Below are positions 3,514 to 45,218 of a stretch of DNA of 64,000 nucleotides, in pieces. The position numbers and the translations under genes were made by a program. The stretch spans positions 124,001 through 188,000 of the IMG/VR virus record IMGVR_UViG_3300044712_000810; one strand, 5' to 3'. Position 1 is the first letter of the stretch, and every line of letters starts with the position of its first letter. The notes under the pieces are model-generated. The model was not told the origin of the DNA. It did no database searches and saw only the letters and a list, made by a program, of their open reading frames with translations.

Positions 3514-3696
3514 TTATTGAATATTACGATTATTTTCCTGATTTTGTTTTTGAGCTACTTTAGACATGCCAGACACTTTCTTTAATTCATCCGAATCCTG
3601 TTTACCGCCATCGTTTTTAGATAACTCAGTAACATTGTCATATGGATTCGAAACAATTTCATCATACTCAACTAATACTTTTATAACGGAAATCAT
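3514..3696 (-). CDS. Small protein with MISVIKVLVE leader
   Basis: ORF with RBS; shares N-terminal leader with other late genes. Confidence 0.5.
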   Translation of the reverse strand: MISVIKVLVEYDEIVSNPYDNVTELSKNDGGKQDSDELKKVSGMSKVAQKQNQENNRNIQ

Positions 3697-3706
3697 TATT
3701 ATCTCC

Positions 3707-3967
3707 TTATCTAAGAACTTGTCTTGCTTTTATTTTAGCTCTAGAACCAAGTTTCTTACGCATTCTATCTTTTACTATATTTAATTGTTGACGATAGAAT
3801 TGATATTTCTTATAATCCATTTGATCGGATTTCTTTGCCATGAATACTGTTTCACGACCAGCTAAACGTGAACGTTTTTGAATTGCACCAGATCTAATCA
3901 TACTTGTTTTTACTTCTGCTAATATCATACCAGAAGTAATAGCCTCAAATAAACTATCAAAATTCAT
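3707..3967 (-). CDS. Basic hypothetical protein
   Basis: GGAG RBS; K/R-rich. Confidence 0.6.
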   Translation of the reverse strand: MNFDSLFEAITSGMILAEVKTSMIRSGAIQKRSRLAGRETVFMAKKSDQMDYKKYQFYRQQLNIVKDRMRKKLGSRAKIKARQVLR

Positions 3968-4027
3968 AGTTCCTCCAATAAAATCTGCAATACAGATATG
4001 ACTAAAAATATCTGTATTGCAGACATA

Positions 4028-5863
4028 TTATGCAAAAATATTTTGTTCTAATTCCATATTATGAAGTCTACGACTTAATTCATCAAATGCAATATTTGAT
4101 GTTCCAACATTTACATTTAACCAATTTTTTGGATATGTTGGTGTATATGAAATATGTGCTGCTGATCTGAATAATAGTTTCGATCCATTAACAGATCCTC
4201 CATAAACACCATCAATTATTGTATATGAGTTATTACATTCAACGGATGTCCCACCATTAATAGTTACAGAAAACAAACCATTCGGATTTTGTAAAAGGGG
4301 ATTATTATTTAAATCAAGTGCAATCGGACCTTGGGCATTAATTATCGAACCAGAAAACAGGTTTACTATCCCACCAGTTGCTTCTATTACTGCACGTGTT
4401 GTTTGATTTCCATCAATTGCAAAACTGTGCATTGCGAAGTTTCCACCAGTTATACGAATATTAGGATAATCACCTGAGCAAAAACCTTTAACACCAACAA
4501 GATTAATTACACCATTTGATATGATTAATGGTGAATTTGTAGCAACTGCATTACTATTTAAAGTAATATTGTTTCCATAAAATCCACCACTATTAGTAAC
4601 GGTGCCTTCACACTTAAAATTAGAAACATATGCTTGTGCACTTAATAATGAAACATTACCATTAACAGTAATATCTTTAATTCCAACTTCCACATTAGAT
4701 GCTGTTAAATTGCCATGTATAATAGTAGATGTCTGTCCTAATCCCATAAGTACACAGTTATCATCAATATAAACATCTTCATTATATGTACCCGGCATAA
4801 CAAGTATACAATATGAACCAGACATATAATCAATACATGATGTAATACTTTTAAATGGTTTTGCAACAGTACCATCTGGAGAATATACATCAATACGATT
4901 ACAGTCAACATATCTTAAAGTAGTTGTTTTAATATCTAATGTCGATCTATTTAATTTATAAATAAGATTATCTAATGCATTATATATTGTTGTTGGGACA
5001 GTATTTCCCCATTCCGAAGATGTAGCCGGTGAATAATTAATAGATGCTTTATGTGTTAATTCATCAGCAAGAGTATCAACAGCCTGTGGAATAGTTGTCG
5101 GTAACGGTAATGTCCAATCATTAGGATCAGATGGTATATATTGTAACAAATCCTGTGTTGATGGATTTATAGCAACCCAACTCGATCCATCATTTGATAT
5201 TTCCCATCTGTTTTCAGTCTCATTATATTTAAGACCAACAGTTGGTTGATTTCCACGTTTGACATAAATACCAACATCCTCATATGGAGTTCCACTAATA
5301 AAATCTTTATTAAGAGTAAATGTTGGTGACGGAGTTCCATCAATATCGGCTGTTGTTGATTGTAAATCAATTATTGTTTGTGAATCAACTTTATTATCTA
5401 ATATCGACTGTAAACCAGTAATATTAGATATATTATGTGCATCTGGATTATTTCGACCAATACTATTTGTATGATCAGAAAATGGAGTTTTAAAAAATGG
5501 GCGAACATCAAAAATAGAAGTATCTGTAATTCTATCAGTATCTTGTTCAACAAATATTAATGCTAACGGAAAATCATTTGTTGGAATATCTGGAGGAATC
5601 GGATTTTTAGATTCTGGACCATATGATATTCTTATTTCGCCACCCATGGTTAATGATATAAGTGTCCATCTAGCATTTACAGCTGGTGGAGATATAGTAA
5701 ATGATTGTCCACCAACAAATTCAATATACTTCGTACCGTGATAAAAACCACCATCAGACACTCTAATCTTCATATTTGCTGGTGAATTAGCAGTAACTTT
5801 TAATGTAGCAAAATGAGCATTAGAGCGCCTTAACGTATCACCATATGGAGGTAGCGCTATCAT
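4028..5863 (-). CDS. Virion/tail-associated protein with pectin-lyase-like beta-helix
   Basis: DGTVAKPFKSI...ILVMPGTYNEDV motif followed by N/G/T-rich beta-helix pattern. Confidence 0.65.
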   Translation of the reverse strand: MIALPPYGDTLRRSNAHFATLKVTANSPANMKIRVSDGGFYHGTKYIEFVGGQSFTISPPAVNARWTLISLTMGGEIRISYGPESKNPIPPDIPTNDFPLALIFVEQDTDRITDTSIFDVRPFFKTPFSDHTNSIGRNNPDAHNISNITGLQSILDNKVDSQTIIDLQSTTADIDGTPSPTFTLNKDFISGTPYEDVGIYVKRGNQPTVGLKYNETENRWEISNDGSSWVAINPSTQDLLQYIPSDPNDWTLPLPTTIPQAVDTLADELTHKASINYSPATSSEWGNTVPTTIYNALDNLIYKLNRSTLDIKTTTLRYVDCNRIDVYSPDGTVAKPFKSITSCIDYMSGSYCILVMPGTYNEDVYIDDNCVLMGLGQTSTIIHGNLTASNVEVGIKDITVNGNVSLLSAQAYVSNFKCEGTVTNSGGFYGNNITLNSNAVATNSPLIISNGVINLVGVKGFCSGDYPNIRITGGNFAMHSFAIDGNQTTRAVIEATGGIVNLFSGSIINAQGPIALDLNNNPLLQNPNGLFSVTINGGTSVECNNSYTIIDGVYGGSVNGSKLLFRSAAHISYTPTYPKNWLNVNVGTSNIAFDELSRRLHNMELEQNIFA

Positions 5864-5873
5864 GAATCACCTC

Positions 5874-6350
5874 TTATCTGTAGTCGGCTGTACTTAATTG
5901 TTCTACAACTATTGTACTTGTTCCTTCTACACATTTTATAATAACTTTAGTACAACGACGGAACATAAGTAATATTTCATTAACAACACCACCAATAATA
6001 CTATGTGGATTTGTTGTTTCTGATTCTAAATAAATTTCAAATAAACTATTTGGCGATACGGCAACAAAACGTAACGCACTAGTATGTTCAATATTAATAT
6101 CAATTGTTTCTGTATCACCGGCTGTCATTCCAGTAAATTTATGTGTTGATAATACTGGATTATATAAATCGGTAGTTGGATCAAGCATAAGCATATGTGG
6201 ATAATGTGCTGGATCAATGAAATAATCAATACTTTTTACTTCAGATGATTTAAAAGTATGGTTCATGTATCCAAATACTTTATCAGAATCGTTTTGATAC
6301 TTTGGCATGTATAACACTCCTAGAAATTTAGTGGGGGCATCCCATGACAC
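5874..6350 (-). CDS. Hypothetical protein (start may be ATG 6308)
   Basis: 158-aa ORF in the late operon; GGAG lies 8 nt upstream of ATG 6308. Confidence 0.55.
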   Translation of the reverse strand: MSWDAPTKFLGVLYMPKYQNDSDKVFGYMNHTFKSSEVKSIDYFIDPAHYPHMLMLDPTTDLYNPVLSTHKFTGMTAGDTETIDINIEHTSALRFVAVSPNSLFEIYLESETTNPHSIIGGVVNEILLMFRRCTKVIIKCVEGTSTIVVEQLSTADYR

Positions 6351-6400
6351 CCCCTATTTAAAGAGACCTGTCGCTGGAGGGGTAGTAACCGGTCTCTTCG

Positions 6401-6973
6401 TTACGACAATTTTGAAAAATCATTTCTAACATTATTAACTCTGTTAGCCCATCCACGTAAAAACTCTTTAAGTTTTGGTTTCTTTTCAGCTAAATCATGA
6501 TAAAACTGTAAGCGTTCAAGTAAATATTCATCATCCATATATGATTTATCTTGAATTGCATTATATGCAGCAAGAGTTCCAGGACCAATACGTCCATCAA
6601 CCGCAATATTATTATTGTTATAACGATTAATAACTTTTTGAAGTAAACGTAATCCTGTACCTGGACCAGCATTAACAATCATATCAAACATCGCATATTG
6701 AAGATTGATATTTTCCTCATAACGATCCAAGTCATATTCATCCCAAAAATATTTCTTATATATTTTTATCGCATCTTCTTCTGATAAATTCTTAATATCA
6801 TTTGCATCAATATCGCCATCTTTATCAATATCACCAATTTCTGTATCATGGGTTCCGGCCAAAAATCTTAAACTAATGCCTCGATTAGTTGCTCCGCCGG
6901 GGTCATTAGGATTATTTACCCATCCACCTTCATGAACTAATACTAATGGAATTATTTTGTCAAAGTTTGACAT
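6401..6973 (-). CDS. Endolysin, glycoside hydrolase family 108 + peptidoglycan-binding domain
   Basis: HEGGWVNNPNDPGGATNRGIS catalytic motif; FDMIVNAG, VDGRIGPGTL, FLRGWANRV. Confidence 0.9.
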   Translation of the reverse strand: MSNFDKIIPLVLVHEGGWVNNPNDPGGATNRGISLRFLAGTHDTEIGDIDKDGDIDANDIKNLSEEDAIKIYKKYFWDEYDLDRYEENINLQYAMFDMIVNAGPGTGLRLLQKVINRYNNNNIAVDGRIGPGTLAAYNAIQDKSYMDDEYLLERLQFYHDLAEKKPKLKEFLRGWANRVNNVRNDFSKLS

Positions 6974-7725: not shown

Positions 7726-7956
7726 CTACTTTTTCATACCTTCTTTTTTTGCTTGATTTTCCATCTTTTCAAGACGATCATAATAATCAGGTATTTCTGA
7801 TAAATGATCTTTAGCTATTGCTATTGCTACAGTTGGACTATTAGTGTGTTCCTTTTCTATTTTAACACCATGTTTTAATTCTTTATTATTGAAGGTTTTA
7901 TCAGGCACCCTGTCGTGCCTCCCAACATGTTGCAGAGTCTTTATAACACTTATCAT
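7726..7956 (-). CDS. DUF5661-like protein
   Basis: GVKIEKEHT...IAKDHLSEIPDYYDRLEKME matches a family recalled from large viruses. Confidence 0.7.
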   Translation of the reverse strand: MISVIKTLQHVGRHDRVPDKTFNNKELKHGVKIEKEHTNSPTVAIAIAKDHLSEIPDYYDRLEKMENQAKKEGMKK

Positions 7957-8320
7957 ATTTTGTTCCTAAATATTTTAAAATTATTTTACGAATATCACCA
8001 TATGAATATGGTTTAAAAATAATTTCATTAAATCCTGCTTGTTTCATTTCAAATATTGCTTCATCATCAGTAAATGCAGTTTGAGCTATAATCGGAGTTG
8101 AATAATTTGAATCTCTAATAAACTGTGCTATTTCAATTCCGTTTATATTAGGAAGTTGTATATCTAATAAAAATAAATCATATGTATTATTCATTATTTT
8201 ATTAATAGCTTCATAACCATCGTCGCATACATCATAATCCAAACCAAGTTTATCACAAATAGTCATTAAATACATTTCGTTGACTGCATTATCTTCTACT
8301 ATTAATATTCTAGGTCGCAT
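7901..8320 (-). CDS. Response regulator receiver (hybrid-kinase type)
   Basis: RILIVEDNAVN, DLFLLDIQLPNINGIE, PIIAQTA, IIFKPY. Confidence 0.9.
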   Translation of the reverse strand: MRPRILIVEDNAVNEMYLMTICDKLGLDYDVCDDGYEAINKIMNNTYDLFLLDIQLPNINGIEIAQFIRDSNYSTPIIAQTAFTDDEAIFEMKQAGFNEIIFKPYSYGDIRKIILKYLGTKYDKCYKDSATCWEARQGA

Positions 8321-8332: not shown

Positions 8333-9871
8333 TTAGTCAATACGTTCAAATGGCAAAATAACTGAAAATACAGTTCCTTTACCAGGTTCACTACAAACGT
8401 GAATAGACCCTCCCATAAGTTCAATAAAACGAAGACAGATATTTAATCCTAGTCCAGTTCCAACGATAGTTTTAGTAAAACTAGTTTCAACTCTTGAAAA
8501 ACTATCAAAAATTTTATCTTGATATGGAGAAGGAATTCCAATACCGGAGTCTTCAACATTTAATCGAAGTTTATTATTTGATATTAATGATATGTGTAAA
8601 TTAACAAAACCTTTTTCTGTAAATTTAATAGCATTTCCTAATAAATTTATAAGAACTTGTTTAAATTTACTATCATCAATTTTAATAGATTGTGGTATAT
8701 CATCATCAATTTTAATATCAAATGTTAAACCTTTTTCTAATGTTTGTAATGTAACAATATTAGTCACAGATGAAACGCATCTTCTGAATACAGTTGATTT
8801 TGGTTCAAATTTATGAATACCATTTTCTATTTTAGATAAATCTAATATATCTTCAATTAATGCTAATAATGTTTTTGTTGCCTTTTTAGCATTACTTAAA
8901 TATATTTTTTGTTTTTCTAAATCTGTAGTATGAGAAAGTATTTCAATCATACCAAATACACCATTTAATGGTGTTCTAATTTCATGTGACATATTAGCTA
9001 AGAATGTACTTTTAGTTCTATTTGCATATTCAGCATGTTCTTTTGCTATTTGTAATTCTTTTACAGTATTTTGCAATTCATATACACGATCATCAATTAT
9101 TTGAAATAAATCCATTTCACGTTTTATAAGTCGATTTAAAAGATACATTGCTAAAATTAAAATAACAAACGTAAAGAATATAATTAAAATCGTTTTAAAT
9201 AACATATCAGAGAAATGAACTTCAAAATCGAAAATTTCAAAAATCTTACGTTCAGATAAACTTACACCAATAGTTAAATATATATCTGAATTATTTAATT
9301 TAAATGATCTCCAAGAAATATATTCTTTACCAAGATCATGTGACCATATATACCAATCATTACCATTAGTTGAATTTGAAATTCCAGAAAATAAATTATC
9401 AATATTCTTAGCACCACTCCAAATTTGATTTTTGAATACCGTTTTAATGTCATCTTGGTTTGGATGATTTCGATAATCTTTATCATATATAACCATTTCT
9501 GGAGTATACATAAATACATCATTACTATTAAATAGTTGAATATCATCAACAAAATATGGAACAATAAATTCATTTATAATCTTTAAATCAGGACAATCTG
9601 GTCTACTTTTCTTTTTTAATTCAAACTCTAATTGTATATTTTGTTCAATTATTTTTAAAAATTCATTTTCTAATAAATAAATACCATTAACGGCACTTCG
9701 AACTTCCCGATCATTATGTTCAAAATAATAATACACAAAAGTACAAGCTTGTACTATCCATATTACTGGCATTAGGATCTTTAAGATCTGATTTATCATA
9801 CGAATTTTATTTTTCATTTTATATCCTACTTTATAAATCGTCTTTATTCCATCCTTTATTAACGGCATCAT
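8333..9871 (-). CDS. Membrane sensor histidine kinase
   Basis: Two TMs flanking an extracytoplasmic domain; H-box [16 protein letters not shown]-box [15 protein letters not shown]1 [10 protein letters not shown]2 GTGLGL. Confidence 0.93.
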
Positions 9872-10202: not shown

Positions 10203-10406
10203 TTAAACTTTAGTCTCTTGTGGTTTAGTTTTTATAGGTTTGATTTGATTTTTTGTCATATCATGTTTATCTAATGAATCATTATTAACTTGTACATGTA
10301 ATTTATTTCCAGCGTACCCTGGATTATTTTTTAATTTATGATATGGTTTTTTGGTTTTATCATTATCATTTTTAAAAGGTACTAAATTTTCAATTATTGA
10401 AATCAT
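10203..10406 (-). CDS. Small basic protein with MISIIENL leader
   Basis: ORF coupled to upstream gene. Confidence 0.5.
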   Translation of the reverse strand: MISIIENLVPFKNDNDKTKKPYHKLKNNPGYAGNKLHVQVNNDSLDKHDMTKNQIKPIKTKPQETKV

Positions 10407-30022: not shown

Positions 30023-30045
30023 CGGGTGGGCCGCAAGGCCCGCCT

Positions 30046-30474
30046 TTAATGTTTATTTGTTTTAAGTAATAACCATTGTGTTTCATTATTATCTTTACCA
30101 GGATATTTAATAAACGCAAATGTTCCTTTTATTTTTTGACCATTAAAGTTTACTAAAATTTTAGAATCATCCCATGATAATATAGTACAATATCCATAAT
30201 CATATTTAGATACTTTACCTGCACCATAATTTGGTTCACTTATTTCACCTTCAAAATCACCCCATGAAAGATCATGATCCGGTTGCATGAATACTGCAAT
30301 TTTTTGACTTGTATTAAAAATTAAGTTAGTGAGTTTTTTGGTGGCCCAAGATTTATAAACTCCATCTTTTTCAATACGTATATCGTAATGTGTACCCGAT
30401 TTAATAGCATCATGCTTCTGAATTACAAATTGGGGTCCGCCTTTACTTTCTAAAAGAGTAAGAATACTTAACAT
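30046..30474 (-). CDS. Stand-alone LigD 3'-phosphoesterase (PE) domain
   Basis: FVIQKHDA..THYDIRIEKDGVYKSWA; DHDLSWGDFEGEISEPNYGAGKVSKYDYG; start reassigned to MLSILTLLE. Confidence 0.85.
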   Translation of the reverse strand: MLSILTLLESKGGPQFVIQKHDAIKSGTHYDIRIEKDGVYKSWATKKLTNLIFNTSQKIAVFMQPDHDLSWGDFEGEISEPNYGAGKVSKYDYGYCTILSWDDSKILVNFNGQKIKGTFAFIKYPGKDNNETQWLLLKTNKH

Positions 30475-30475
30475 G

Positions 30476-30901
30476 TTATACTCCAAAATTATCTTTAATA
30501 ATTTTTATTTTGTCTTGATCTTTTGGTCTATTTAGTTTTTCATAAAATTTAAGTAATAACTGTGGAGACATAAACATCCAACCACTAATCTTTACTGTAT
30601 GATTTTTAAGTTCATCAAATGACATATTAAACATTTCTATTTTATTAGAAAACTCAAACATATTATCTTGTGTTTTATATATGCTATTTTCCGATTTACT
30701 TACATCGTTGCGTTTTATTAATTCGTTATATATTTTATTTGAAACACATACATCAAGATCTCTATTTGATGGTATTAAGTTTTTAACAACCAATAATGCA
30801 CTTCCACAAAAAACTATATCTGTTTTTGGTATATTAAATTGTTTAACTTTTTCAATATGATTAAGATTAAGTTCGGTTAAAAGAGTAAGAATACTTAACA
30901 T
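30476..30901 (-). CDS. Nucleotidyltransferase-fold protein
   Basis: CGSALLV...RDLDVCV (GS..DxD); C-terminal RPKDQDKI; start reassigned to MLSILTLLTE. Confidence 0.65.
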   Translation of the reverse strand: MLSILTLLTELNLNHIEKVKQFNIPKTDIVFCGSALLVVKNLIPSNRDLDVCVSNKIYNELIKRNDVSKSENSIYKTQDNMFEFSNKIEMFNMSFDELKNHTVKISGWMFMSPQLLLKFYEKLNRPKDQDKIKIIKDNFGV

Positions 30902-33131: not shown

Positions 33132-33160
33132 CACTCCACGTAGGAACCACTGCGTGGTTC

Positions 33161-33619
33161 TTACTTGTGTGCCAACTCAAGTGCTTTTATTACTGATTTA
33201 TTATGTGCGTCGATAGATTTTTCATGTGACTTAATTAAATGTTTTGTTATTTCAGGTGGATTTGCTGGATTACGTATGGCTTGTTGTATTTGACTAAGAC
33301 GTTCTTTATGTGATTGTGCAATAGCCATATGATGTTGTGATAATGCTTGATTATTTTCTTTTTGTAATTGTTCTTTTTGTAATCTTTCTTGTTCTTTTGC
33401 TTGTTTTTCAGCTTCTCTTTGTTGTTCTTTTTGTTTACGTTCTTGTTCTTTTAATTTACGTTCAGCTTCACGTTCTTTCTTTTCTTTATCACGTAATGCT
33501 TTTTCTTTAGCTCTTTCTTTTTCTTTTTGTTTCTTTTCACGCTCACGCATTTTTTGTTCACGTTTTGATTTTTTACTGTTTGTTTCACTTTCTTCGAGGA
33601 TTGTATAAATACTAATCAT
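33161..33619 (-). CDS. E/K/R/Q-rich coiled-coil protein with MISIYTILEE leader
   Basis: GGAG RBS; low-complexity charged helix. Confidence 0.65.
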   Translation of the reverse strand: MISIYTILEESETNSKKSKREQKMREREKKQKEKERAKEKALRDKEKKEREAERKLKEQERKQKEQQREAEKQAKEQERLQKEQLQKENNQALSQHHMAIAQSHKERLSQIQQAIRNPANPPEITKHLIKSHEKSIDAHNKSVIKALELAHK

Positions 33620-33687
33620 TATATTCTCCAAATTAATTTGGTTTTTATACTTTTTATATAGAAATATTAAATAAACAAGGAGGAAAC

Positions 33688-33972
33688 ATGTATCCGACTC
33701 TTGAAGACTGGCACATCACTAAACGTGATGGTTTTAGATTTCCCTGTTTAAGAGGAAAAGTTTTTAATCATCCAACATCTCATTTGAATGGTAAAGTAAT
33801 CGATACTTCACCAATATTACAAATAACACCAAACAAAGATATAGCTAGAACTGAATCTAGACTATATAAACTTGGGCGGTATGATGCTGTTACCCAATTA
33901 AAAACATTGGTTGAATTTCCAGATCTTGAGGAGGAAATTCTCACATTACCATATGTTAAAATTGATGACTAA
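33688..33972 (+). CDS. Hypothetical phage protein
   Basis: LEDWHI..LRGKVFNHP..GKVIDTSPI..ARTESRLYKLG is a recurring phage small-protein pattern. Confidence 0.7.
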   Translation: MYPTLEDWHITKRDGFRFPCLRGKVFNHPTSHLNGKVIDTSPILQITPNKDIARTESRLYKLGRYDAVTQLKTLVEFPDLEEEILTLPYVKIDD

Positions 33973-33974
33973 AC

Positions 33975-33996
33975 AAGGGGAGGATACCCTCCCCTT
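33975..33996. terminator. Bidirectional terminator
   Basis: AAGGGGAGG-ATAC-CCTCCCCTT between convergent genes. Confidence 0.75.
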
Positions 33997-34001
33997 TCTT
34001 A

Positions 34002-35198: not shown

Positions 35199-35344
35199 AT
35201 AAAGGCCTTTTGTTAAATTTTTATCACAATCCCAGTACGCCTAATCCTGATCATGATATTTTTTTGGGTTATAAAATCTCCAATCTTTTTCACCAATTTT
35301 TTTTAATTCTTCAATTTTATTTTTAATATATTGTTTATGTTCTT

Positions 35345-36136: not shown

Positions 36137-36284
36137 AAAGAAACTCCTGTTTTTGTTATTTTACAGTACTACACACGCCTTCAAAAGAATTTTAATATTC
36201 AATTTACTCATATAGAAATATAATATATAGTATACAGTAGTATACAAAAAATTACTATGCCCCAAAAGGGCAAAGGGGTTCAAA

Positions 36285-36911
36285 ATGAACGTCATTCGCA
36301 CTGCCCTTCTGGGCATGGCTATGGTACTGGTCTTTATGACCGGAAGCGCTTTCGCGCAATTTGAGGACTTGTTCCTCAAGCAAACTGAAACCATCCCTCA
36401 GGAAGGTGCCTTTGCCAAGAGTGGGTGGGGCGGCAGCATCAACACCGGTTCTTCCGGAGTTGCATACTCCGGAGACTTCAACGCCGTAAAGGCTGCGATT
36501 AAGACTCCTCAACAGGCGTCTGCCTACATGGCTGAAAATTTCACCTATGGGTGGGATACTCGCTATGGTGGCTTCAAGTCCACTCCTCCGGCAGAGGTGA
36601 ACTCCACGAAGTGGGGTTCATGCAAGGAATTCACATCGTTCTTCGATGCGGTTTTGGCTGATGACGGAATCCAGGTCCAACCAGTGATGGTGAGATATGG
36701 CTCTGGAGACTCGTCGTATCATATCATGTCGGTTGCGACTTACAACGGAGGTGCATACCTTCAGAGTAACCAGGACATCTGGTCTGTTGGCAGCAACCAG
36801 CAGATCATTGATCTGGCAAGTGGCAACCTGCCCGGCGGCGTCATTCCCTTCAAGGGAGGTGGCGAGATGATCAGGTATTACCCGCAGGGTACTACCAACT
36901 TCACACCGTAA
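36285..36911 (+). CDS. Secreted transglutaminase/cysteine-protease-like protein
   Basis: Signal peptide ending SAFA; WGSCKEFTSFF (Cys), YHIMSV (His); GC-richer codons. Confidence 0.55.
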   Translation: MNVIRTALLGMAMVLVFMTGSAFAQFEDLFLKQTETIPQEGAFAKSGWGGSINTGSSGVAYSGDFNAVKAAIKTPQQASAYMAENFTYGWDTRYGGFKSTPPAEVNSTKWGSCKEFTSFFDAVLADDGIQVQPVMVRYGSGDSSYHIMSVATYNGGAYLQSNQDIWSVGSNQQIIDLASGNLPGGVIPFKGGGEMIRYYPQGTTNFTP

Positions 36912-37001
36912 CCTTAATAAGGGGCGCGCTCGTAAGGGCGCCTCTTCTTTTTAGTTATTTGAAGATTTCATATAGAAATATTAAAATAACAAGGAGGCAT
37001 C

Positions 37002-37229
37002 ATGCAACCCATTTTAGTGAAGAAAGTGCAATTCAAGAAGACACATTTAGGTGTCGTCGTTTCTGCAACTTCCAAAAGCGATCTTCAAGTTGAAGGAACT
37101 GTTCGTGAAATTGACTACGCGTATAGACGCATAACTCTCTTAGGTGGCACAGTTCTCACAGCAACAAACGATGTTAAGGAATACACATTCCTTGATCTGT
37201 TGATGGTTCCGTTGTTCCTTAATGGTTAA
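37002..37229 (+). CDS. Hypothetical protein
   Basis: Promoter + AGGAGG. Confidence 0.65.
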   Translation: MQPILVKKVQFKKTHLGVVVSATSKSDLQVEGTVREIDYAYRRITLLGGTVLTATNDVKEYTFLDLLMVPLFLNG

Positions 37230-37272
37230 CACATATTCCCGAAGTCCTTCGGGACTTTGGTTAGGAGGTTAA

Positions 37273-37878
37273 ATGAACGTCGAATTTGATTTGGGTTGGA
37301 TTATCGGCAGCATCATTGTAATATATTTCGTTAAGGATTTTCTACTTGAATTGCTTGAAGATATTGTTAATATTTTCAGAAGGAAGCCTGAACCAGTTCC
37401 AACATATATACCACGTTTAAAAGTTCCAACATTTCCACAATGGCCAGATCTTCCAAGAGATATGTCGCCCGGTGTATGGACATCTACAACAACTACAACC
37501 GAACGTGAGTTCGAAGCTGGAGAAAAATATATGGCATTGCACATTGTTCATCAAGACTACAGTGGACAAGATTTTGAAGGAACAGTATTTGATGGATGCA
37601 TTTTCGAATATGTCACGTTTCGTGAATGTGACTGTCGAAATGTAAACTTCATCAACTGTCAATTCAACAATGTGTATTTTCCTGAATCTGACTTGGAAGG
37701 TGCACAGTTTATCAACTGTAATGGACCAGTTGATTATTCCGAAGCAACTGATACAAGAAATATGGTTATTAAAACCATAGAAACTTCCAATTTGGAACCC
37801 ACAAAGAAAGTAACGAGGCCCAGGCTTGTCAGGCCCAGACCTCCTAAGAAAAAGATAAGACTCAGTTTCGAGAAGTAA
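37273..37878 (+). CDS. Membrane-anchored pentapeptide-repeat protein
   Basis: N-terminal TM; DYSGQDFEGTVFDGCIFEYVTFRECDCRNVNFINCQFNNVYF..SDLEGAQF. Confidence 0.8.
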   Translation: MNVEFDLGWIIGSIIVIYFVKDFLLELLEDIVNIFRRKPEPVPTYIPRLKVPTFPQWPDLPRDMSPGVWTSTTTTTEREFEAGEKYMALHIVHQDYSGQDFEGTVFDGCIFEYVTFRECDCRNVNFINCQFNNVYFPESDLEGAQFINCNGPVDYSEATDTRNMVIKTIETSNLEPTKKVTRPRLVRPRPPKKKIRLSFEK

Positions 37879-37904
37879 TAAGTGGGGCTTCGGCCCCATT
37901 TTTA

Positions 37905-38051
37905 TTATAACTTTTTAACTTTATCAACTGCTTGATCGATTGCACTTTCAGCTTTTTGTTCAGCAACTTGTACTATTTTTTTATTACTATATTTCTTATA
38001 AATAACTAAACCAATAAGAACACCAGCTGTGATAATGATTAATTCCCACAT
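37905..38051 (-). CDS. 48-aa membrane peptide
   Basis: Manual translation MWELIIITAGVLIGLVIYKKY...; GGAG RBS. Confidence 0.55.
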   Translation of the reverse strand: MWELIIITAGVLIGLVIYKKYSNKKIVQVAEQKAESAIDQAVDKVKKL

Positions 38052-38061
38052 ATTAATCTCC

Positions 38062-38886
38062 TTAATAATCTTTAAGATGTTTTGATGAAAAACTTAATGC
38101 TAATTCCGCTTCTTTTAATTCAGGCTTCAATTCAAGAACACGTCGCATACATCTTCTTGAATCTTCCCAATGACCTAATTCAATATGAATACGTCCTAGA
38201 TTAAACCATAGTGCATAATTGTTTGGTTCTATTTCAATTGCTTGATTATATAATTCAATAGCACGATCATGCTTTTTTGTTTTTCTTAACACTTGACCTA
38301 ACCTAGAATAATTATGAACAGCAGTAGGATTTAATTCAATACAACGTTCTAAAAATGTTATTGATTCTATATGTCCACTTTTAAATAATACATCCGCCAT
38401 TTCATTAATAGTATCATAATCATCAGGATATTCATTTAGTAGTTTTGTAAACTGTGATAATGCCCCATCAAATTTACGTGTTTCATATAATCTTTTTGCT
38501 TTAGTCAATCGATTCATCTTTTCCATACATTCAAAAATCATTTCTTCATCTTGTTGTTTATTATATAATTCATTAAGTTTAGGGGGCAAAGATCTTAAAA
38601 CGTTAAACATTTCATGTTCTTTACCGTATTTATAATCAAAAATTATATTTAATTGTTTAATATATTTATTAAGTGATATTAAATGTATTGCTCTTTCAAA
38701 TAGTTCTTGAAATTCTTTTCGTTCTTGTATAAACATTTCTTTATTTAATTTAGAAAATACATATAAACTAAATATGACTTGTTTTATTATGACTTCTATA
38801 TTTTTTTCACGTACAGTAGCAGTAATATTTAATAAATATCCTTTTGCCGTTTTAATTAAGTTTCGTGGGTTTTTATCATTGTCCAT
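38062..38886 (-). CDS. TPR protein
   Basis: HNYSRLGQVLRKTKKHDRAIELYNQAIEIEPNNYALWFNLGRIHIELG. Confidence 0.85.
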   Translation of the reverse strand: MDNDKNPRNLIKTAKGYLLNITATVREKNIEVIIKQVIFSLYVFSKLNKEMFIQERKEFQELFERAIHLISLNKYIKQLNIIFDYKYGKEHEMFNVLRSLPPKLNELYNKQQDEEMIFECMEKMNRLTKAKRLYETRKFDGALSQFTKLLNEYPDDYDTINEMADVLFKSGHIESITFLERCIELNPTAVHNYSRLGQVLRKTKKHDRAIELYNQAIEIEPNNYALWFNLGRIHIELGHWEDSRRCMRRVLELKPELKEAELALSFSSKHLKDY

Positions 38887-38913
38887 GTTTACCCTTTTAA
38901 TATTCTAAATTTT

Positions 38914-38924
38914 CATATAGAAAT
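38914..38924 (+). promoter_or_regulatory. Phage promoter motif driving the gene + RNA unit
   Basis: TTTTAATATT-N9-CATATAGAAAT. Confidence 0.7.
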
Positions 38925-39002
38925 AGTATTAGTGTACGACGAAGGTCGTAGCAAACTCATTTGTTTGTTTATTTTATTGTAAAACTCAAGGAGAACAATA
39001 CC

Positions 39003-39755
39003 GTGGCAAAACTACACGAACTACTGGCAGCTGAAAAAGACGTTAAGACCAAATCACAAAAACTCGTGATCGAAGCAAAAGACACATTCGGCAAGAAGCA
39101 TGATCACTTCACCGGCTTTACAAAGACGTATAAGCCGAAGAATGATGAAGACGCTTATGAAGCTGAAGCACTCAGCGAATCAAAAGAAATGGTTACGACC
39201 GTTGGTCGTAAACTGAATTATCTTCTTGCAAACATGGTTGATGCCATTGATATTGCATATCAGAAAGATTTGACGAACAGAGTGGCAAAAGCAGATATTA
39301 CCGTTGATGGCATTGTCATCGCATCGGACGTACCTGCAACCACACTGTTGCATCTTGAAGATCAGCTTCGCGAACTTCGTGATGTCTGTGACAAGATCCC
39401 GACACTGAAGCCTGGTATCAAGTGGGTGCTCGATGCATCTCTTGGTGAAGGCGTCTATGTCACTGAAAAGCCTGAGGTGAAAATCCGTACAAAGAAGCAA
39501 ACTGTTTACAAGACTGTCGCCCAGGCCACCGACAAACACGCCGCACAAGTTGTGGCTGAAATGCAAGATGTGAACATCGGTAAGTATGAAGAAATTCATA
39601 CTTCCGGTATGATCACTCCTGCAGATAAATCAAAACAAATGGATAAGATCGAGAAACTCATCGCAGCCGTCAAAAGGGCTCGTGCTCGTGCAAACGAACA
39701 GGAAGTCGCTTCTGGCGAGATTGCAAAGAAGCTTTTCGATTATATTACGCAGTAA
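39003..39755 (+). CDS. Uncharacterised 250-aa helical protein upstream of the tRNA-mimic RNA
   Basis: GTG start with AAGGAG RBS; MAKLHELLAAE...QKDLTNRVAKADITVDG...VPATTLLHLEDQL...AVKRARARANEQEV. Confidence 0.8.
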   Translation: MAKLHELLAAEKDVKTKSQKLVIEAKDTFGKKHDHFTGFTKTYKPKNDEDAYEAEALSESKEMVTTVGRKLNYLLANMVDAIDIAYQKDLTNRVAKADITVDGIVIASDVPATTLLHLEDQLRELRDVCDKIPTLKPGIKWVLDASLGEGVYVTEKPEVKIRTKKQTVYKTVAQATDKHAAQVVAEMQDVNIGKYEEIHTSGMITPADKSKQMDKIEKLIAAVKRARARANEQEVASGEIAKKLFDYITQ

Positions 39756-39813
39756 TCGCTTAACAGCGTTACAAATATGGCCAAACTCATTGTGACTGCC
39801 AAGTAATACTCAG

Positions 39814-39890
39814 AGAGGAGACTGCGGTTCGAATCCGCACCGGATGCCCAAAAAACATCATCCGGTCGTCTAGCGGCTTAGGATGCCTCT
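39814..39890 (+). ncRNA. Permuted tRNA-like module 1
   Basis: AGAGG-AGAC-TGCGG TTCGAAT CCGCA-CCGGATG-C-CCA-(8 nt)-CATCCGG-TC-GTCT AGCGGCTTA GGAT-G-CCTCT. Confidence 0.85.
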
Positions 39891-39990
39891 TAACCTAACT
39901 TGGTTCAATCTCAAATTCAAATTCAAATTATTGGCCAACAAGCTGAAAGGCTTAAAAGAAACTATTTCAAAATTGGTTCGACCGACCATC

Positions 39991-40087
39991 GCTCAGGCGC
40001 GGGTTCAAATCCCGTGGGGACCTCCAAAATGCTGGGAGTTTATATTCCTAGTATTCTGGGTCCCCTAGTTCAGTGGTAGAACGGAGT
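39991..40087 (+). ncRNA. Permuted tRNA-like module 2
   Basis: GCTC-AGGC-GCGGG TTCAAAT CCCGT-GGGGACC-T-CCA-(32 nt hairpin)-GGTCCCC-TA-GTTC AGTGGTA GAAC-G-GAGT. Confidence 0.85.
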
Positions 40088-40771: not shown

Positions 40772-41692
40772 TTACTTTATTTTTGCTTCATTTCTATTAA
40801 AACTTTGTAATTCAGTTCTTGATACTTCCATTGCTTTAAGACCTAATACTGATAAACTCTTAACCGGTATAAATCCGCCTGATATTTTATTTGGTGCCAA
40901 GTCAATATTGACTCGACCTGGAACACGTTTATGTGCTATTGAATACTTCTTAAGCATATCAGGAGTATTAATCATATACATTAATTTGTCTTTAATTTCA
41001 TTTATTCTCATTTGTTTCTTAAACAGAATTTGAATATGAAATCCAGTTTTACCAGTGAATACAATACGTGCAGATTCAACATCCGAATACTTTATTACAT
41101 AATCATAAATATCTTCGGCTGCTTTCTTATTATTTTCAAAGTTATCACTATCAATGTCCAAAAGTCCAAACCATTCACGTTCACCCATTTCACAATGAAT
41201 ACTTAGGGTTCGGCCGGAGATCTTATTTTCGTAGTTTGAACTGTTAAGTTTTATATATCCTGATGGTGATTCAGAATCTTTTCGTTTAACAATTGTTGAA
41301 TTCAATTCAGGAACTATAAAAAATATTAAGTTTCTATTATTGGTTTCATCAATTATTTCTTTTTTGTGTTTCATATAATAATCATGAACATCTTTTTGAG
41401 TCAAACCAGATGGATAAAATTCATTTTTAACTATTACAGTATCTGGATTTTCTAATTGTTTTGTTTGTGGTAATATTTCTTGTATTCTTCCTACTTGCCC
41501 ATCTTCTAATCTTACTTTAATACCACGTGTATGTTGTGATTTGCTTGTGAGAATATCTTTAACTATGCCGGTTGTTAATTTACCTGTAGGTTGATCTTTC
41601 TTTAATACTATATTTACTTTAATACCAGGCTTAATATTCGCTCTATAAAAATTATCGCTTTCGAACATGTTTGTCATACATAGTGAAAACAT
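40772..41692 (-). CDS. YwbE-like domain fused to LigD-type primase-polymerase (AEP) domain
   Basis: N-term IKPGIKVNIVLKKDQPTGKLTTGIVKDILT..HTRGIKVRLEDGQVGRIQEI; C-term LTQKDVHDYY, LLDIDSD, FTGKTGFHIQI. Confidence 0.8.
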   Translation of the reverse strand: MFSLCMTNMFESDNFYRANIKPGIKVNIVLKKDQPTGKLTTGIVKDILTSKSQHTRGIKVRLEDGQVGRIQEILPQTKQLENPDTVIVKNEFYPSGLTQKDVHDYYMKHKKEIIDETNNRNLIFFIVPELNSTIVKRKDSESPSGYIKLNSSNYENKISGRTLSIHCEMGEREWFGLLDIDSDNFENNKKAAEDIYDYVIKYSDVESARIVFTGKTGFHIQILFKKQMRINEIKDKLMYMINTPDMLKKYSIAHKRVPGRVNIDLAPNKISGGFIPVKSLSVLGLKAMEVSRTELQSFNRNEAKIK

Positions 41693-43834: not shown

Positions 43835-44025
43835 CAAACCGAGAACAGCTTCGAGTATTAAGAGATGAATTATATAAGATATATAAACAAATGGATGATA
43901 AAGATAAAAATACTTTTGATGATCTTGATCGGTTATTTCCATATATATGGTTAACTGGTCAACTTCCTAAAGTTAGAAAAGAACATATAATCAAAGCTCA
44001 AAAAATACTTATAAAGCATATTTAG
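43831..44025 (+). CDS. Small protein, QKL-tail family
   Basis: MTNREQLRVL...AQKILIKHI. Confidence 0.65.
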   Translation: MTNREQLRVLRDELYKIYKQMDDKDKNTFDDLDRLFPYIWLTGQLPKVRKEHIIKAQKILIKHI

Positions 44026-44380
44026 TTAGTATTTCATCAACTTTGTTAATATCTTTAATATTAATTTCAAGAAGCGCAATGTTGTTATTAAGACAATAAG
44101 CGCGCTTAATTTCATCACGCATTTTAGTAGTTTCATGAACTCGTTTAGCCTTTGCATATTTGTTAACAGGTTTAAAATGGTGTTGTCCTTGAAATTCGAT
44201 AAGTAGATTCTTTTCTGGAATATAGAAATCGAATCTTAATGGATTACCATTTTCACTTAATAAATCTGGAAATGTTTTCTCTTTAGTATATTCAATATTA
44301 TTCAATTCAAGAAAACATCCGACTGCAAATTCGCCTTTACTAGCACGTTTACCGTTTAAGAAATATCGTTTCTTACGCAT
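44009..44380 (-). CDS. PD-(D/E)XK (DUF559/Vsr-like) nuclease
   Basis: LRFDFYIPEKNLLIEFQGQHHF...D..K...C..NNIALLEI. Confidence 0.8.
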   Translation of the reverse strand: MRKKRYFLNGKRASKGEFAVGCFLELNNIEYTKEKTFPDLLSENGNPLRFDFYIPEKNLLIEFQGQHHFKPVNKYAKAKRVHETTKMRDEIKRAYCLNNNIALLEINIKDINKVDEILTKYAL

Positions 44381-44399
44381 TGTTACTCCTGGAGGATTA

Positions 44400-44648
44400 A
44401 TGACACAATATGATATATTGGTTGGTCATTGTCAAGACATATATAAACTATATATAATTCATTGTAAACATTTACAAAAGTTAAGTAAGAATCCAGATAA
44501 TTTCATTCCACCCGATTATATACTTAAATATTTATTACGGGCATTATTACTCGTAAGTAATAAAACATTATCAGATTATACCCAAAGAATTAATTTCGCA
44601 ATTAAAACTAAGATAGAACTTCAAAAAATAGTGATACCAGAGTTATGA
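44400..44648 (+). CDS. Small protein ending ELQKIVIPEL
   Basis: GGAGG RBS. Confidence 0.6.
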   Translation: MTQYDILVGHCQDIYKLYIIHCKHLQKLSKNPDNFIPPDYILKYLLRALLLVSNKTLSDYTQRINFAIKTKIELQKIVIPEL

Positions 44649-44902
44649 ATATAAGCGATCACATGATAAATGCATTCAGATTAACATTTGCTACATATTT
44701 ACAACTATGGTCATCATGTGAAGAAATCGTTTATAAAGATATTAATGATCATTGTGAATTGATATTAGATTATCAATCACCAGATGAATTCAAACGCCAA
44801 TATTTAGTTCAATGTAAAAATGATGTTGATGTTCAATTATTAATAAATGATATACAACATGAATTGCAAAAAATACAAAAATTTGCAATAATAAAACTAT
44901 GA
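44645..44902 (+). CDS. Small protein ending LQKIQKFAIIKL
   Basis: ATGA coupling. Confidence 0.6.
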   Translation: MNISDHMINAFRLTFATYLQLWSSCEEIVYKDINDHCELILDYQSPDEFKRQYLVQCKNDVDVQLLINDIQHELQKIQKFAIIKL

Positions 44903-44933
44903 GTTGGGGAGGATATACCTCCCCAATTTTTTA

Positions 44934-45218
44934 TTATAAACCTAATCTTCTTTTAACTAATTCATTTGTCATTTCACGTGCTGTGCCTGATTTAACTGGT
45001 GGAATTTCACGGACATTACGCGGTGTTCCATCTTCATGTGTTGTGACTGCCTTTTCAGAACCTCCGGGCATTCCAACTAATTTACTTAAATCGCCCGATA
45101 CTCTTTCTGTACCATCAAACTTGTCTTTAGCAGCTTTTGCCGCATTTTTAAGTACTCCACCAACAGTACCCATAGTGTCATCATCAATTTGTTCGATGAT
45201 TTTGATAATACTTAACAT
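44934..45218 (-). CDS. Small protein with MLSIIKIIEQ leader
   Basis: Isolated minus-strand gene between terminator and promoter motif. Confidence 0.65.
   Translation of the reverse strand: MLSIIKIIEQIDDDTMGTVGGVLKNAAKAAKDKFDGTERVSGDLSKLVGMPGGSEKAVTTHEDGTPRNVREIPPVKSGTAREMTNELVKRRLGL

What the first reader, a model, noticed from the sequence alone, without database searches (positions are those of the whole stretch)
3514..45218. Shared N-terminal M(I/L)S(I/V)xx(I/L)xE leader on scattered late genes: candidate capsid-targeting propeptide
Seen: MLSILTLLES (LigD-PE, 30474), MLSILTLLTE (NTase, 30901), MISIYTILEE (33619), MISVIKVLVE (3696), MLSIIKIIEQ (45218), MISIIENL (10406), MISVIKTLQ (7956), and more loosely MFSLCMTNMFES (YwbE-AEP, 41692). 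These are unrelated proteins, all on the late strand. The two MLSILTLL genes share about 24 identical bp. Established: T4 internal proteins carry a ~10-aa capsid-targeting sequence cleaved after Glu by the prohead protease. Inference: these enzymes may be packaged and injected with the DNA.
Basis: partly seen in the sequence, partly recalled or inferred. Interest (0 to 1): 0.62.

Follow-up and report, generated by a model that had tools for sequence, protein, structure and literature searches.

The report
Shared capsid-address tag on phage proteins
A family of uncultivated giant phages puts the same 9-residue N-terminal tag (about MISxxYLFE) on a dozen to thirty unrelated small proteins and DNA-repair enzymes, most likely to load them into the capsid and clip the tag off, as phage T4 does with its internal proteins but on a far larger scale.

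Summary
All eight N-termini are in the sequence. The 314.8-kb phage genome has 13 genes starting M-[I/L]-S-[I/V/L] plus one looser copy, against about 0.7 expected. All lie on the structural-gene strand.

The serine uses both codon boxes at genome-wide frequencies, so selection acts on the protein. The carriers share nothing detectable beyond the tag.

Relatives carry it too. A 285.6-kb relative has 32 such genes, 30 of them in its 124-gene structural block and 2 among the other 317 genes. I collected 144 distinct tagged proteins; their consensus is M-I-S-(I/V)-x-x-L-F-E.

The tag ends in hydrophobic-x-Glu, the cleavage motif of T4 prohead protease gp21, and this phage encodes a gp21-family (S77) protease. 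A similar hydrophobic-hydrophobic-Glu (LFE-type) motif sits near the N-termini of its capsid protein, its protease and a head-core protein.

Homology to cellular enzymes (LigD phosphoesterase, a putative nucleotidyltransferase, DUF2196) starts just after the tag. The same N-terminus clustering recovers IPI, IPII and IPIII in T4 and nothing comparable in an AR9-like jumbo phage.

Most likely this is a capsid-targeting propeptide. Packaging and cleavage are inferred, not shown. I rate it a new variant of a known kind.

The parts
30046..30474 (-). Tagged cargo gene: tag MLSILTLLE followed by a LigD-type 3'-phosphoesterase domain (142 aa)
   Evidence: Pfam LigD_N at 6.5e-20 covers residues 19-123. 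PDB phosphoesterase domains align from residue 9-14. Tagged orthologues occur in two relatives.
30476..30901 (-). Tagged cargo gene: tag MLSILTLLTE followed by a putative minimal nucleotidyltransferase (141 aa)
   Evidence: Only phrog_12854, function unknown. Atlas neighbours include 'putative nucleotidyltransferase' and DUF6036 clusters, and structure alignments start at residue 9-13. Shares 24 identical coding nt with the 30474 start.
33161..33619 (-). Tagged cargo gene: tag MISIYTILEE followed by a very basic K/E/R-rich low-complexity protein (152 aa, pI 9.8)
   Evidence: No family hit.
40772..41692 (-). Tagged cargo gene: degenerate tag MFSLCMTNMFE, then a DUF2196 (YwbE-like) insert, then a LigD-polymerase-like AEP domain (306 aa)
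   Evidence: DUF2196 at 2.1e-28. Orthologues in L110 and G003 carry MISLIKFLFE or MSVMYLFE directly on the AEP part. The best fold matches are LigD polymerase domains and CAPP Prim-Pol at E about 2e-3, from a low-confidence model.
44934..45218 (-). Tagged cargo gene: tag MLSIIKIIE followed by a small protein of unknown function (94 aa)
   Evidence: No family hit.
3514..3696 (-). Tagged cargo gene: tag MISVIKVLVE followed by a 50-residue polar tail (60 aa), inside the structural block
10203..10406 (-). Tagged cargo gene: tag MISIIE followed by a small basic protein (67 aa, pI 9.7)
7726..7956 (-). Probable tagged gene: MISVIKTLQ (Gln where Glu is expected) followed by a DUF5661 domain (76 aa). 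The start overlaps the upstream receiver gene by 56 nt.
   Evidence: DUF5661 at 3.9e-13. Family members in relatives carry MISVNYLFE or MLSIYKLFE. My gene caller preferred the start at 7908.
3707..3967 (-). Possible variant leader: MNFDSLFE then AITSGM. It belongs to a second N-terminal pattern (xxL-F/Y-E-A-I-x-S-G-L-I) seen on about five structural-block proteins.
   Evidence: In relatives, homologues of two such proteins carry the MIS tag instead.

Best explanation
The tag is a capsid-targeting propeptide of the T4 CTS type. In this account it docks otherwise unrelated proteins to the assembling prohead core. The phage's gp21-family (S77) prohead protease then removes it by cutting after the Glu, usually residue 9, sometimes 6, 7 or 10. 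The mature cargo stays inside the head and leaves with the DNA at infection.

The cargo set is large and turns over quickly. Most members are small, often basic or low-complexity proteins. A conserved subset is enzymatic: a LigD-type 3'-phosphoesterase, a LigD-polymerase-like primase-polymerase, a putative nucleotidyltransferase, DUF2196 and DUF5661.

Shown here:
- the motif, its enrichment, and selection at the amino-acid level;
- its modular N-terminal position on unrelated proteins;
- its restriction to the structural-gene block and to this phage lineage;
- the presence of an S77 protease, and the fit of the tag's end to that family's cleavage motif.

Inferred: binding to the prohead core, cleavage, presence in virions, and injection.
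For: 1. Enrichment. 12-14 genes carry the tag against 0.7 expected. In the relative G003, 32 of 441 genes carry it. I collected 144 unique tagged proteins, with consensus M1, I/L2, S3 (fixed by the search pattern), I/V/L4, L7, F8, E9. The first Glu is at position 9 in 60, at 6 in 27, at 10 in 18, and absent from the first 20 residues in 11.

2. Protein-level selection. Ser3 codons are TCA 56, AGT 39, TCT 28 and TCC 14, matching genome-wide Ser usage across two codon boxes.

3. Location. G003 has 30 of 124 structural-block genes tagged against 2 of 317 others. This genome has 8 of 97 against 5 of 387. In 21-kb loci of relatives, up to 14 of 37 genes are tagged, all co-oriented with the structural genes.

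4. Modularity. The tagged proteins are not detectable paralogues. Cellular homologues align only from residue 9-16 onward. In one family, homology starts at the residue after the Glu (GERLD...) although the leaders differ in length. In the AEP family the tag stays at the extreme N-terminus even after a DUF2196 domain was inserted behind it.

5. Protease. Pfam Peptidase_S77 scores above its cut-off, with PHROG head-maturation-protease hits. It is 26-32% identical to gp21 of T4-type phages. It aligns to T4 gp21 structure 5JBL, placing its own His (EIDHP) and Ser (GFSLR) in conserved blocks; that these are the catalytic columns is my reading of the alignment. T4 gp21 cuts after L/I-x-Glu, and in the T4 CTS the N-terminal part targets while residues 8-10 direct processing (PMC9026906). 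This matches the two conserved halves here, M-I-S-I and L-F-E.

6. The same hydrophobic-hydrophobic-Glu motif is conserved near the N-termini of the major capsid protein, the protease itself and the small gene between portal and protease, in this genome and in G003.

7. The set of tagged genes differs between syntenic relatives. T4 reviews describe the same for the T-even internal proteins, which are diverse apart from a conserved CTS (PMC3012670).

8. More distant relatives (L037, L038) lack MIS tags. They show another short leader, M(S)DINQLVLE, on at least two small proteins including a DUF2196 homologue, plus a looser third copy.

9. Method controls. The same clustering gives IPI, IPII and IPIII as the top cluster in T4. 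It gives nothing comparable in the AR9-like jumbo phage Goe21.
Against: - There are no virion proteomics and no expression data. The only sequencing run holding this DNA is its probable source metagenome, and no RNA run holds it.
- About 8% of tagged proteins have no Glu in the first 20 residues. This includes a whole acidic-protein family (MISIIRVGSS...) and the 7956 gene.
- Five of this genome's tagged genes lie outside the contiguous structural block, in a mixed-strand accessory region.
- Within orthologous families the tag (41% identity) is not better conserved than the mature part (54%). It is a degenerate motif rather than a fixed peptide.
- No scaffold protein was identified, so the docking partner is unknown.
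- The tag shows no sequence similarity to the T4 CTS.
Confidence: 0.62

Rival explanations
1. The tag addresses proteins to the virion or its assembly machinery but not as a cleaved head-interior propeptide. It could be a docking peptide for tail, baseplate or decoration sites, or an uncleaved anchor to the inner capsid wall, comparable to encapsulin cargo-loading peptides.
For: In the window the tagged genes sit among tail-fibre, baseplate-like and lysin genes. Some tagged proteins lack a Glu. No cleavage evidence exists.
Against: The tag's conserved 3' half is exactly the S77 cleavage motif. The same motif is found on the capsid protein, the protease and a head-core gene. Homology in one family begins right after the Glu. 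Small basic or disordered cargo resembles known head internal proteins more than tail parts.
Confidence: 0.13
2. The tag is an intracellular sorting signal used during infection, for example import into a phage nucleus-like compartment or targeting to the membrane. It would be unrelated to the particle.
For: The phage encodes multisubunit RNA polymerase pieces like the phiKZ/AR9 supergroup, some of whose members build a nucleus. Several cargos are DNA enzymes.
Against: No tubulin (PhuZ-like) gene was found, and no chimallin-like hit among the large unknown proteins tried. None of the core DNA or RNA enzymes checked (PolB, gyrase B, RNA polymerase subunits, a DEAD-box helicase; N-termini) carries the tag. 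Most tagged proteins are tiny low-complexity polypeptides encoded inside the structural block.
Confidence: 0.07
3. The similarity is a nucleic-acid feature: a shared translation-initiation region or a short homology patch that lets gene cassettes recombine into the genome. The encoded peptide would have no function of its own.
For: The two adjacent genes at 30474 and 30901 share 24-26 identical nucleotides. The genome is full of modular promoter-terminator cassettes. Cargo content is highly variable between relatives.
Against: Across 144 tags the invariant Ser is encoded by TCN and AGY in genome-wide proportions. Ile, Leu and Glu codons also vary. Conservation therefore tracks amino acids, including a hydrophobic pattern and a terminal Glu that a DNA signal would not need. 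Upstream DNA shows only an ordinary ribosome-binding site.
Confidence: 0.05
4. The tag is a degradation or timing signal (N-degron) recognised by a host or phage protease, unrelated to head assembly.
For: It is a short conserved hydrophobic N-terminus on many small proteins.
Against: This does not explain confinement to the structural block, the match to the prohead-protease motif, or the same motif on the capsid protein and the protease. There is no similarity to known ClpXP N-motifs (from memory, not tested).
Confidence: 0.04

Closest known systems
Capsid targeting sequence (CTS) of phage T4 internal proteins IPI, IPII, IPIII and Alt (Mullaney and Black 1996; reviewed in PMC9026906, PMC3012670)
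   Same: Both are roughly 10-residue N-terminal add-ons on otherwise unrelated, often small and basic proteins, with an enzyme among them. Both end in hydrophobic-x-Glu, the gp21-family cleavage motif, with a targeting half and a processing half. In both, the cargo genes vary between related phages and only the tag is conserved. Both phages have an S77 protease and a capsid-protein paralogue. The same clustering method finds both sets.
   Different: The sequence is different (M-I-S-I-x-x-L-F-E against M-K-T-Y-Q-E-F-I-A-E). The number of carriers is 13-14 here and about 30 in relatives, against 3-5 in T4. The host phage is a 285-315-kb jumbo phage with its own multisubunit RNA polymerase genes, not a T4-like phage. 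The cargo includes LigD-type end-processing enzymes. Nothing is experimentally shown here.
Propeptides of head, inner-body and ejection proteins of phiKZ-like giant phages (phiKZ, 201phi2-1, SPN3US; PMC5694885, PMC10052503)
   Same: These are also giant phages with virion-packaged proteins and multisubunit RNA polymerases. Many of their head proteins are trimmed after Glu by a gp21-related protease, and the propeptides are thought to target proteins into the prohead.
   Different: Those propeptides are mostly over 100 residues, are not a shared sequence, and are cut at S/A/G-x-Glu. Here the leader is 6-11 residues, shared by all carriers, and has a hydrophobic residue two positions before the Glu, as in T4.
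Encapsulin cargo-loading peptides
   Same: A short conserved terminal peptide that addresses diverse cargo to the interior of an HK97-fold shell.
   Different: Those peptides are usually C-terminal and are not removed. They act in bacterial nanocompartments, and no protease is involved. This is an analogy only; I did not test it.

Membership tests
T4-type capsid targeting sequence (functional class) | Short (about 10-20 aa) N-terminal extension shared by otherwise unrelated proteins | tested here: met
   No similarity beyond the tag. Consensus built from 144 proteins. Cellular homologues align from residue 9-16 onward.
T4-type capsid targeting sequence (functional class) | The extension ends in the prohead protease cleavage motif L/I-x-Glu | tested here: met
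   [IL]xE ends by residue 12 in 11 of 12 tagged proteins against 68 of 472 others. L7-F8-E9 is the consensus in relatives. About 8% have no Glu.
T4-type capsid targeting sequence (functional class) | The phage encodes a gp21-family (S77) prohead protease | tested here: met
   PF03420 scores 31.4 bits against a cut-off of 27. phrog_207 and phrog_3014 hits. tblastn matches to gp21 genes. Alignment to 5JBL places its His and Ser in conserved blocks.
T4-type capsid targeting sequence (functional class) | Carriers are virion (head) proteins, encoded with the morphogenesis genes | tested here: inconclusive
   Gene position supports it: 30 of 124 against 2 of 317 in G003, and 8 of 97 against 5 of 387 here. 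Presence in particles cannot be seen from sequence.
T4-type capsid targeting sequence (functional class) | The tag is cleaved off by the protease during head maturation | not testable with these tools
   The complex prediction of protease with a tagged peptide gave no verdict. This needs mass spectrometry or an in vitro assay.
T4-type capsid targeting sequence (functional class) | The tag is sufficient to package a foreign protein | not testable with these tools
   This needs a cultured relative or a reconstituted prohead.
T4 CTS (sequence family) | Sequence similarity to MKTYQEFIAE-type leaders | tested here: not met
   The consensus differs at every position except Met1, a hydrophobic residue before x-Glu, and the Glu itself. 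It is an analogue, not a sequence homologue.
phiKZ-like giant-phage head propeptides | Long propeptides cut at S/A/G-x-Glu | tested here: not met
   The leader is 6-11 residues, and the residue two before the Glu is mostly Leu or Ile. The motif is as given in PMC9026906 and PMC5694885.
LigD 3'-phosphoesterase (cargo at 30046-30474) | Pfam LigD_N domain and alignment to solved phosphoesterase domains | tested here: met
   PF13298 at 6.5e-20. 3p43 and 3p4h at E 6e-23 and 1e-17.
Archaeo-eukaryotic primase / LigD polymerase fold (cargo at 40772-41692, C-terminal part) | AEP fold with DxD and sxH motifs | tested here: inconclusive
   Conserved D-I-D and F-H-I columns. Pfam DNA_primase_S at E 0.012, below its cut-off. 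The model has pLDDT 55. The top Foldseek hits are all LigD-Pol or Prim-Pol, but at E about 2e-3.

The most novel reading that the evidence does not exclude
A lineage of RNA-polymerase-encoding jumbo phages has turned the capsid-targeting principle into a general delivery system. One 9-residue N-terminal address with a built-in protease site would load about 15 to 30 or more rapidly exchanged cargo proteins per genome (up to 7% of all genes). These include a split LigD-type end-repair kit (polymerase, 3'-phosphoesterase, nucleotidyltransferase) injected with the DNA to protect or mend the incoming genome. More distant relatives would use a different address peptide, co-evolved with their own prohead.
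Probability: 0.45. Interest if true: 0.8.

Novelty: new variant of a known kind. Interest (0 to 1): 0.64.

Why it matters
How giant phages choose which proteins go into the capsid is poorly understood. In phiKZ-like phages the propeptides are long and dissimilar, so cargo cannot be predicted from sequence.

Here a short, recognisable tag would let the whole packaged and injected proteome be read directly from a genome, in phages nobody has cultured. That gives a ready list of candidate anti-defence and take-over proteins.

The conserved tagged cargo (a LigD-like polymerase and phosphoesterase, and in this genome a putative nucleotidyltransferase) suggests that these phages bring their own DNA-end repair or priming enzymes into the cell with the genome.

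A 9-residue tag with a built-in release site is also the kind of part used to load foreign proteins into T4 heads, so a second, unrelated tag is of practical interest.

If the tag turns out not to be a packaging signal, a strictly N-terminal motif on 7% of a phage's genes would still need an explanation.

Tried and rejected
- Nearest known phages. Megablast of 8 kb of the window and tblastn of the capsid protein against 50,697 phage records found nothing. Only the sheath and the protease find distant cultured relatives, AR9/PBS1-like and T4-type.
- Protease-tag complex. The prediction scored 0.00 and gave no verdict. It is not evidence either way.
- Expression. The only run holding this DNA is the probable source metagenome and no RNA run holds it, so I did not use read laying.
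- AEP-like cargo. A sequence profile of it finds no solved structure. Its AlphaFold model is poor (pLDDT 55), so the LigD-polymerase fold match is only a lead.
- Promoter idea. I first read the intergenic motif TTTCTATAT upstream of four tagged genes as their shared, possibly late, promoter. The orientation census rejected this. The motif mostly faces the other way: 33 reverse-only against 7 forward-only contexts here, and 34 against 1 in G003. It belongs to the divergent non-structural neighbours.
- Late promoter. No common late-promoter motif was evident by eye upstream of structural and tagged genes.
- Tag conservation. I expected the tag to be better conserved than the mature parts within orthologous families. 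It is not: 41% against 54% identity.
- Paralogy of the tagged proteins was rejected.
- Phage-nucleus markers. No tubulin was found. Two large orphan proteins give no chimallin-like hit.
- Pfam S77 in G003. The loose first-pass search missed its protease, although a clear homologue is there (N-terminus listed).
- Strict consensus DNA pattern. It gave 15 hits in 2.9 million viral contigs, 10 of them in five known relatives. The other five stretches showed no comparable tagged genes when inspected.

Full report
**What the window is**

The window is bases 124001-188000 of a single 314,837-bp virus record with direct terminal repeats, rated complete, at 33% G+C. It has no close relative among 50,697 deposited phage genomes.

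It encodes:
- split multisubunit RNA polymerase beta and beta-prime homologues, a family-B DNA polymerase, gyrase B and a ribonucleotide reductase;
- a contractile sheath most like those of AR9/PBS1-type and other jumbo phages;
- a head module, on the minus strand at 58.9-71.7 kb, with a portal, a small gene, a prohead protease, a major capsid protein and a capsid-protein paralogue.

With a simple gene caller of my own I obtained 484 genes. One long minus-strand block, 55.7-147.7 kb, holds the structural genes. The first 24 kb of the window belong to that block: tail-fibre-like proteins, a GH108 lysin, and a histidine kinase with two receiver proteins. From 26 to 47 kb the window is a mixed-strand accessory region.

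All eight N-termini are there, each starting at an ATG; seven have a GGAG-type ribosome-binding site and the 10406 start only a weaker one. Across the genome, 12 called genes begin M-[I/L]-S-[I/V]. Shuffling positions 2 to 4 among genes gives 0.69 on average and never more than 5. Only 2 of 2147 internal methionines are followed by the same tripeptide.

Adding the alternative start at 7956 and the loose MFSL copy gives 14. All are on the minus strand. Eight are inside the structural block, five in the mixed region and one at 205.6 kb.

A hydrophobic-x-Glu triplet follows within the first 12 residues in 11 of 12, against 14% of other genes. An unbiased clustering of all N-terminal 10-mers places this set second. 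The first is a tandem array of true paralogues. BLASTP finds nothing in common between the tagged proteins beyond the tag.

The two neighbouring genes at 30474 and 30901 do share 24 identical coding bases.

The 7956 start is the least certain. It overlaps the preceding gene by 56 nt and has Gln in place of Glu. Its DUF5661 homologues in relatives are tagged.

**The tag is a hallmark of a phage lineage**

Using conserved structural proteins as probes, I found two partial relatives and one nearly complete one in IMG/VR, plus about 25 further metagenome loci. They are syntenic with the structural block at 30-60% protein identity.

Around one conserved gene, 116 of 775 called genes start M-[I/L]-S-[I/V/L]. 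All are co-oriented with the structural genes, with up to 14 of 37 in a single 21-kb locus.

The 285.6-kb relative G003 has 32 such genes among 441. Of these, 30 lie in its 124-gene structural block and 2 among the remaining 317 genes (p = 5e-16). In the present genome the split is 8 of 97 against 5 of 387 (p = 0.001).

From 144 distinct tagged proteins the consensus is M, I/L, S, I/V/L, x, x, L, F, E. The first Glu is at position 9 in 60, at 6 in 27, at 10 in 18 and at 7 in 10. It is absent from the first 20 residues in 11. Positions after the Glu are unconserved and rich in Glu, Asp, Ser, Gly and Asn. Related families also show M-I-A, M-I-T, M-V-S and similar starts, so the regular expression undercounts.

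A strict DNA pattern for the consensus finds 15 places in 2.9 million viral contigs. Ten of them are in five of these relatives. The other five stretches showed no comparable tagged genes when inspected.

**Selection acts on the peptide, not the DNA**

The invariant serine is encoded by TCA (56), AGT (39), TCT (28), TCC (14), TCG (4) and AGC (3). These are the genome-wide serine proportions, spread over two codon boxes that are at least two substitutions apart. The other positions also vary synonymously, and upstream DNA shows only an ordinary ribosome-binding site.

**The tag is a module placed in front of unrelated proteins**

- Pfam and PDB alignments of the LigD phosphoesterase begin at residue 9-19.
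- Bacterial look-alikes of the putative nucleotidyltransferase align structurally from residue 9-13.
- DUF2196 starts at residue 16.
- In the family of the 306-aa protein, two relatives carry MISLIKFLFE or MSVMYLFE directly on the polymerase-like domain. Here a DUF2196 domain has been inserted between tag and domain, and the degenerate tag stays at the extreme N-terminus.
- In another family the leaders differ in length, but homology (GERLD...) begins at the residue after the Glu.

The phosphoesterase and the polymerase-like protein are tagged in all three genomes where I found them. The polymerase-like domain has conserved D-x-D and x-H-x columns. Its best fold matches are LigD polymerase domains and a CRISPR-associated Prim-Pol, from a low-confidence model.

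Most other cargos are 40-200-residue proteins that are often basic or low in complexity and have no known family.

The set of tagged genes differs between syntenic relatives. None of this genome's tagged proteins has a detectable homologue in the 68.7-kb relative, which has four tagged genes of its own at other positions.

**The link to the prohead protease**

The protease scores above the Pfam S77 cut-off, hits the PHROG head-maturation-protease families, and is 26-32% identical to gp21 of T4-type phages. It aligns to the T4 gp21 structure with its own His and Ser in conserved blocks.

According to the T4 literature, gp21 cuts after L/I-x-Glu. The first 10 residues of IPIII suffice for packaging. 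Targeting depends on the N-terminal part of the CTS and processing on residues 8 and 10. gp21 itself has such a site near its N-terminus. The internal proteins of T-even phages are diverse apart from the CTS (PMC9026906, PMC3012670).

The tag here has the same two-part build, M-I-S-I then L-F-E. The same motif is conserved near the N-termini of three head proteins, in this genome and in G003:
- the capsid protein (LFE at residues 4-6 and IRE at 12-14);
- the protease (IFE ending at residue 12 here and at residue 14 in G003);
- the small gene between portal and protease.

Hydrophobic-hydrophobic-Glu within the first 14 residues is enriched in structural-block genes even after removing the MIS genes: 25% against 13% here, and 19% against 9% in G003. 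In this genome several homologues of MIS-tagged proteins carry diverged leaders that still end this way.

More distant relatives (about 41% identity in the probe protein) have no MIS tags. At least two of their small proteins, one of them a DUF2196 homologue, begin M(S)DINQLVLE, and a third begins similarly. This suggests lineage-specific address peptides.

**Controls**

The same clustering was applied to three other genomes:
- T4: the top cluster holds IPII, IPIII and IPI, plus one small ORF and one false positive.
- The AR9-like Bacillus jumbo phage Goe21 (27.6% G+C): no comparable cluster.
- G003: a cluster of 28.

The method therefore finds known capsid-targeting sequences, does not invent them in AT-rich jumbo phages, and shows a set several times larger than T4's.

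**Timing**

A roughly 30-nt intergenic unit with core TTTCTATAT occurs about 70 times. I first took it for the promoter of four tagged genes. In most cases it faces the opposite way and precedes non-structural genes, directly after a terminator hairpin. In gene direction it reads TTTCATATAGAAATA. The same holds in G003.

Tagged genes never have it in sense orientation, whereas their plus-strand neighbours in the mixed region do. This fits a different temporal class but does not prove late expression. I found no RNA data.

**Rivals**

- A nucleic-acid signal is contradicted by the codon data.
- A phage-nucleus import signal is unlikely. There is no tubulin or recognisable shell protein, none of the core DNA and RNA enzymes I checked (PolB, gyrase B, RNA polymerase subunits, a DEAD-box helicase) is tagged, and the carriers sit in the structural block.
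- An uncleaved docking peptide, or targeting to another virion part, cannot be excluded and is the main alternative.
- A degron explains none of the context.

**Verdict**

This works like the T4 capsid targeting sequence but is not a sequence relative of it. It differs from the long, dissimilar propeptides of phiKZ-like phages, which are cut at S/A/G-x-Glu (PMC5694885). I file it as a new variant of a known kind.

Packaging, cleavage and injection remain to be shown.

Noticed in passing
window minus strand at about 7550, 10825, 11601, 23749, 28387, 29395, 30947, 31495, 31798, 32606, 33664, 36218, 36978, 38923, 40222, 41719, 42355, 45257, 46596, 48194, 50251, 51312, 56916; plus strand at 58115, 59836, 63616: A roughly 30-nt intergenic unit, TATTTCTATAT(G/A)AAA, six variable bases, then AATATTAAAA, occurs about 70 times in the genome and 64 times in relative G003. 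It usually lies between a GC-rich terminator hairpin and the next gene, reading TTTCATATAGAAATA in gene direction. It is probably the promoter of the phage's own RNA polymerase for non-structural genes, arranged in terminator-promoter cassettes like the PeSL elements of T4-type phages.
   Followed up: partly
window 3079-3501, 7901-8320 and 8333-9817 (minus strand): A phage-encoded two-component set lies inside the structural gene block: a histidine kinase (HisKA plus HATPase_c) and two stand-alone receiver-domain proteins. Two tagged genes lie directly downstream of the receivers.
   Followed up: partly
window 3707-3967 and 17190-17393; genome 86490-86972, 103143-103349, 103361-103936, 114426-114566: A second recurring N-terminal pattern, roughly x-x-L-(F/Y)-E-A-I-x-S-G-L-I then hydrophobic-x-Glu, occurs on about six structural-block proteins. 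Homologues of two of them in relatives carry the MIS tag instead, so it may be a longer, diverged leader.
   Followed up: partly
window 24000-40000: G+C rises to 0.33-0.42 against 0.26-0.30 in the flanks. The region holds accessory genes: a pentapeptide-repeat protein, a PIN-PhoH ATPase, a TPR protein, DUF7873 and a metallophosphatase. It looks like acquired material.
   Followed up: no
window 58167-63905 (minus strand): A run of about 18 consecutive ORFs of 70-126 aa (mostly 70-100) with overlapping stops and starts. Some share N-terminal words. It may be a tandem family like the nine MNxLE(Q/R) genes at genome 205.7-208.3 kb.
   Followed up: no
genome 58985-60619 (outside the window): A 544-aa paralogue of the major capsid protein (about 32% identity), comparable to the T4 gp23/gp24 pair. 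In relative G001 the capsid gene's open frame lacks the first roughly 95 residues, which could be a frameshift, an intron or an assembly error.
   Followed up: no
genome 98652-99986 (outside the window): A well-conserved RecA/KaiC-like ATPase (444 aa) sits in the middle of the structural gene block. It proved the best probe for finding relatives.
   Followed up: no
genome 192883-197325 (outside the window): Three tandem paralogues of 480-495 aa with nearly identical N-termini (MKLSTQENLDIS).
   Followed up: no
L037 and L038 (IMG/VR contigs of 257 and 181 kb): More distant relatives lack MIS tags. At least two small proteins, one of them a DUF2196 homologue, start with M(S)DINQLVLE, and a third starts similarly. 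This may be a lineage-specific alternative address peptide.
   Followed up: partly
window 6401-6973 (minus strand): A GH108 lysozyme with a peptidoglycan-binding domain lies among tail and baseplate-like genes. It could be an endolysin or a virion-associated lysin.
   Followed up: no
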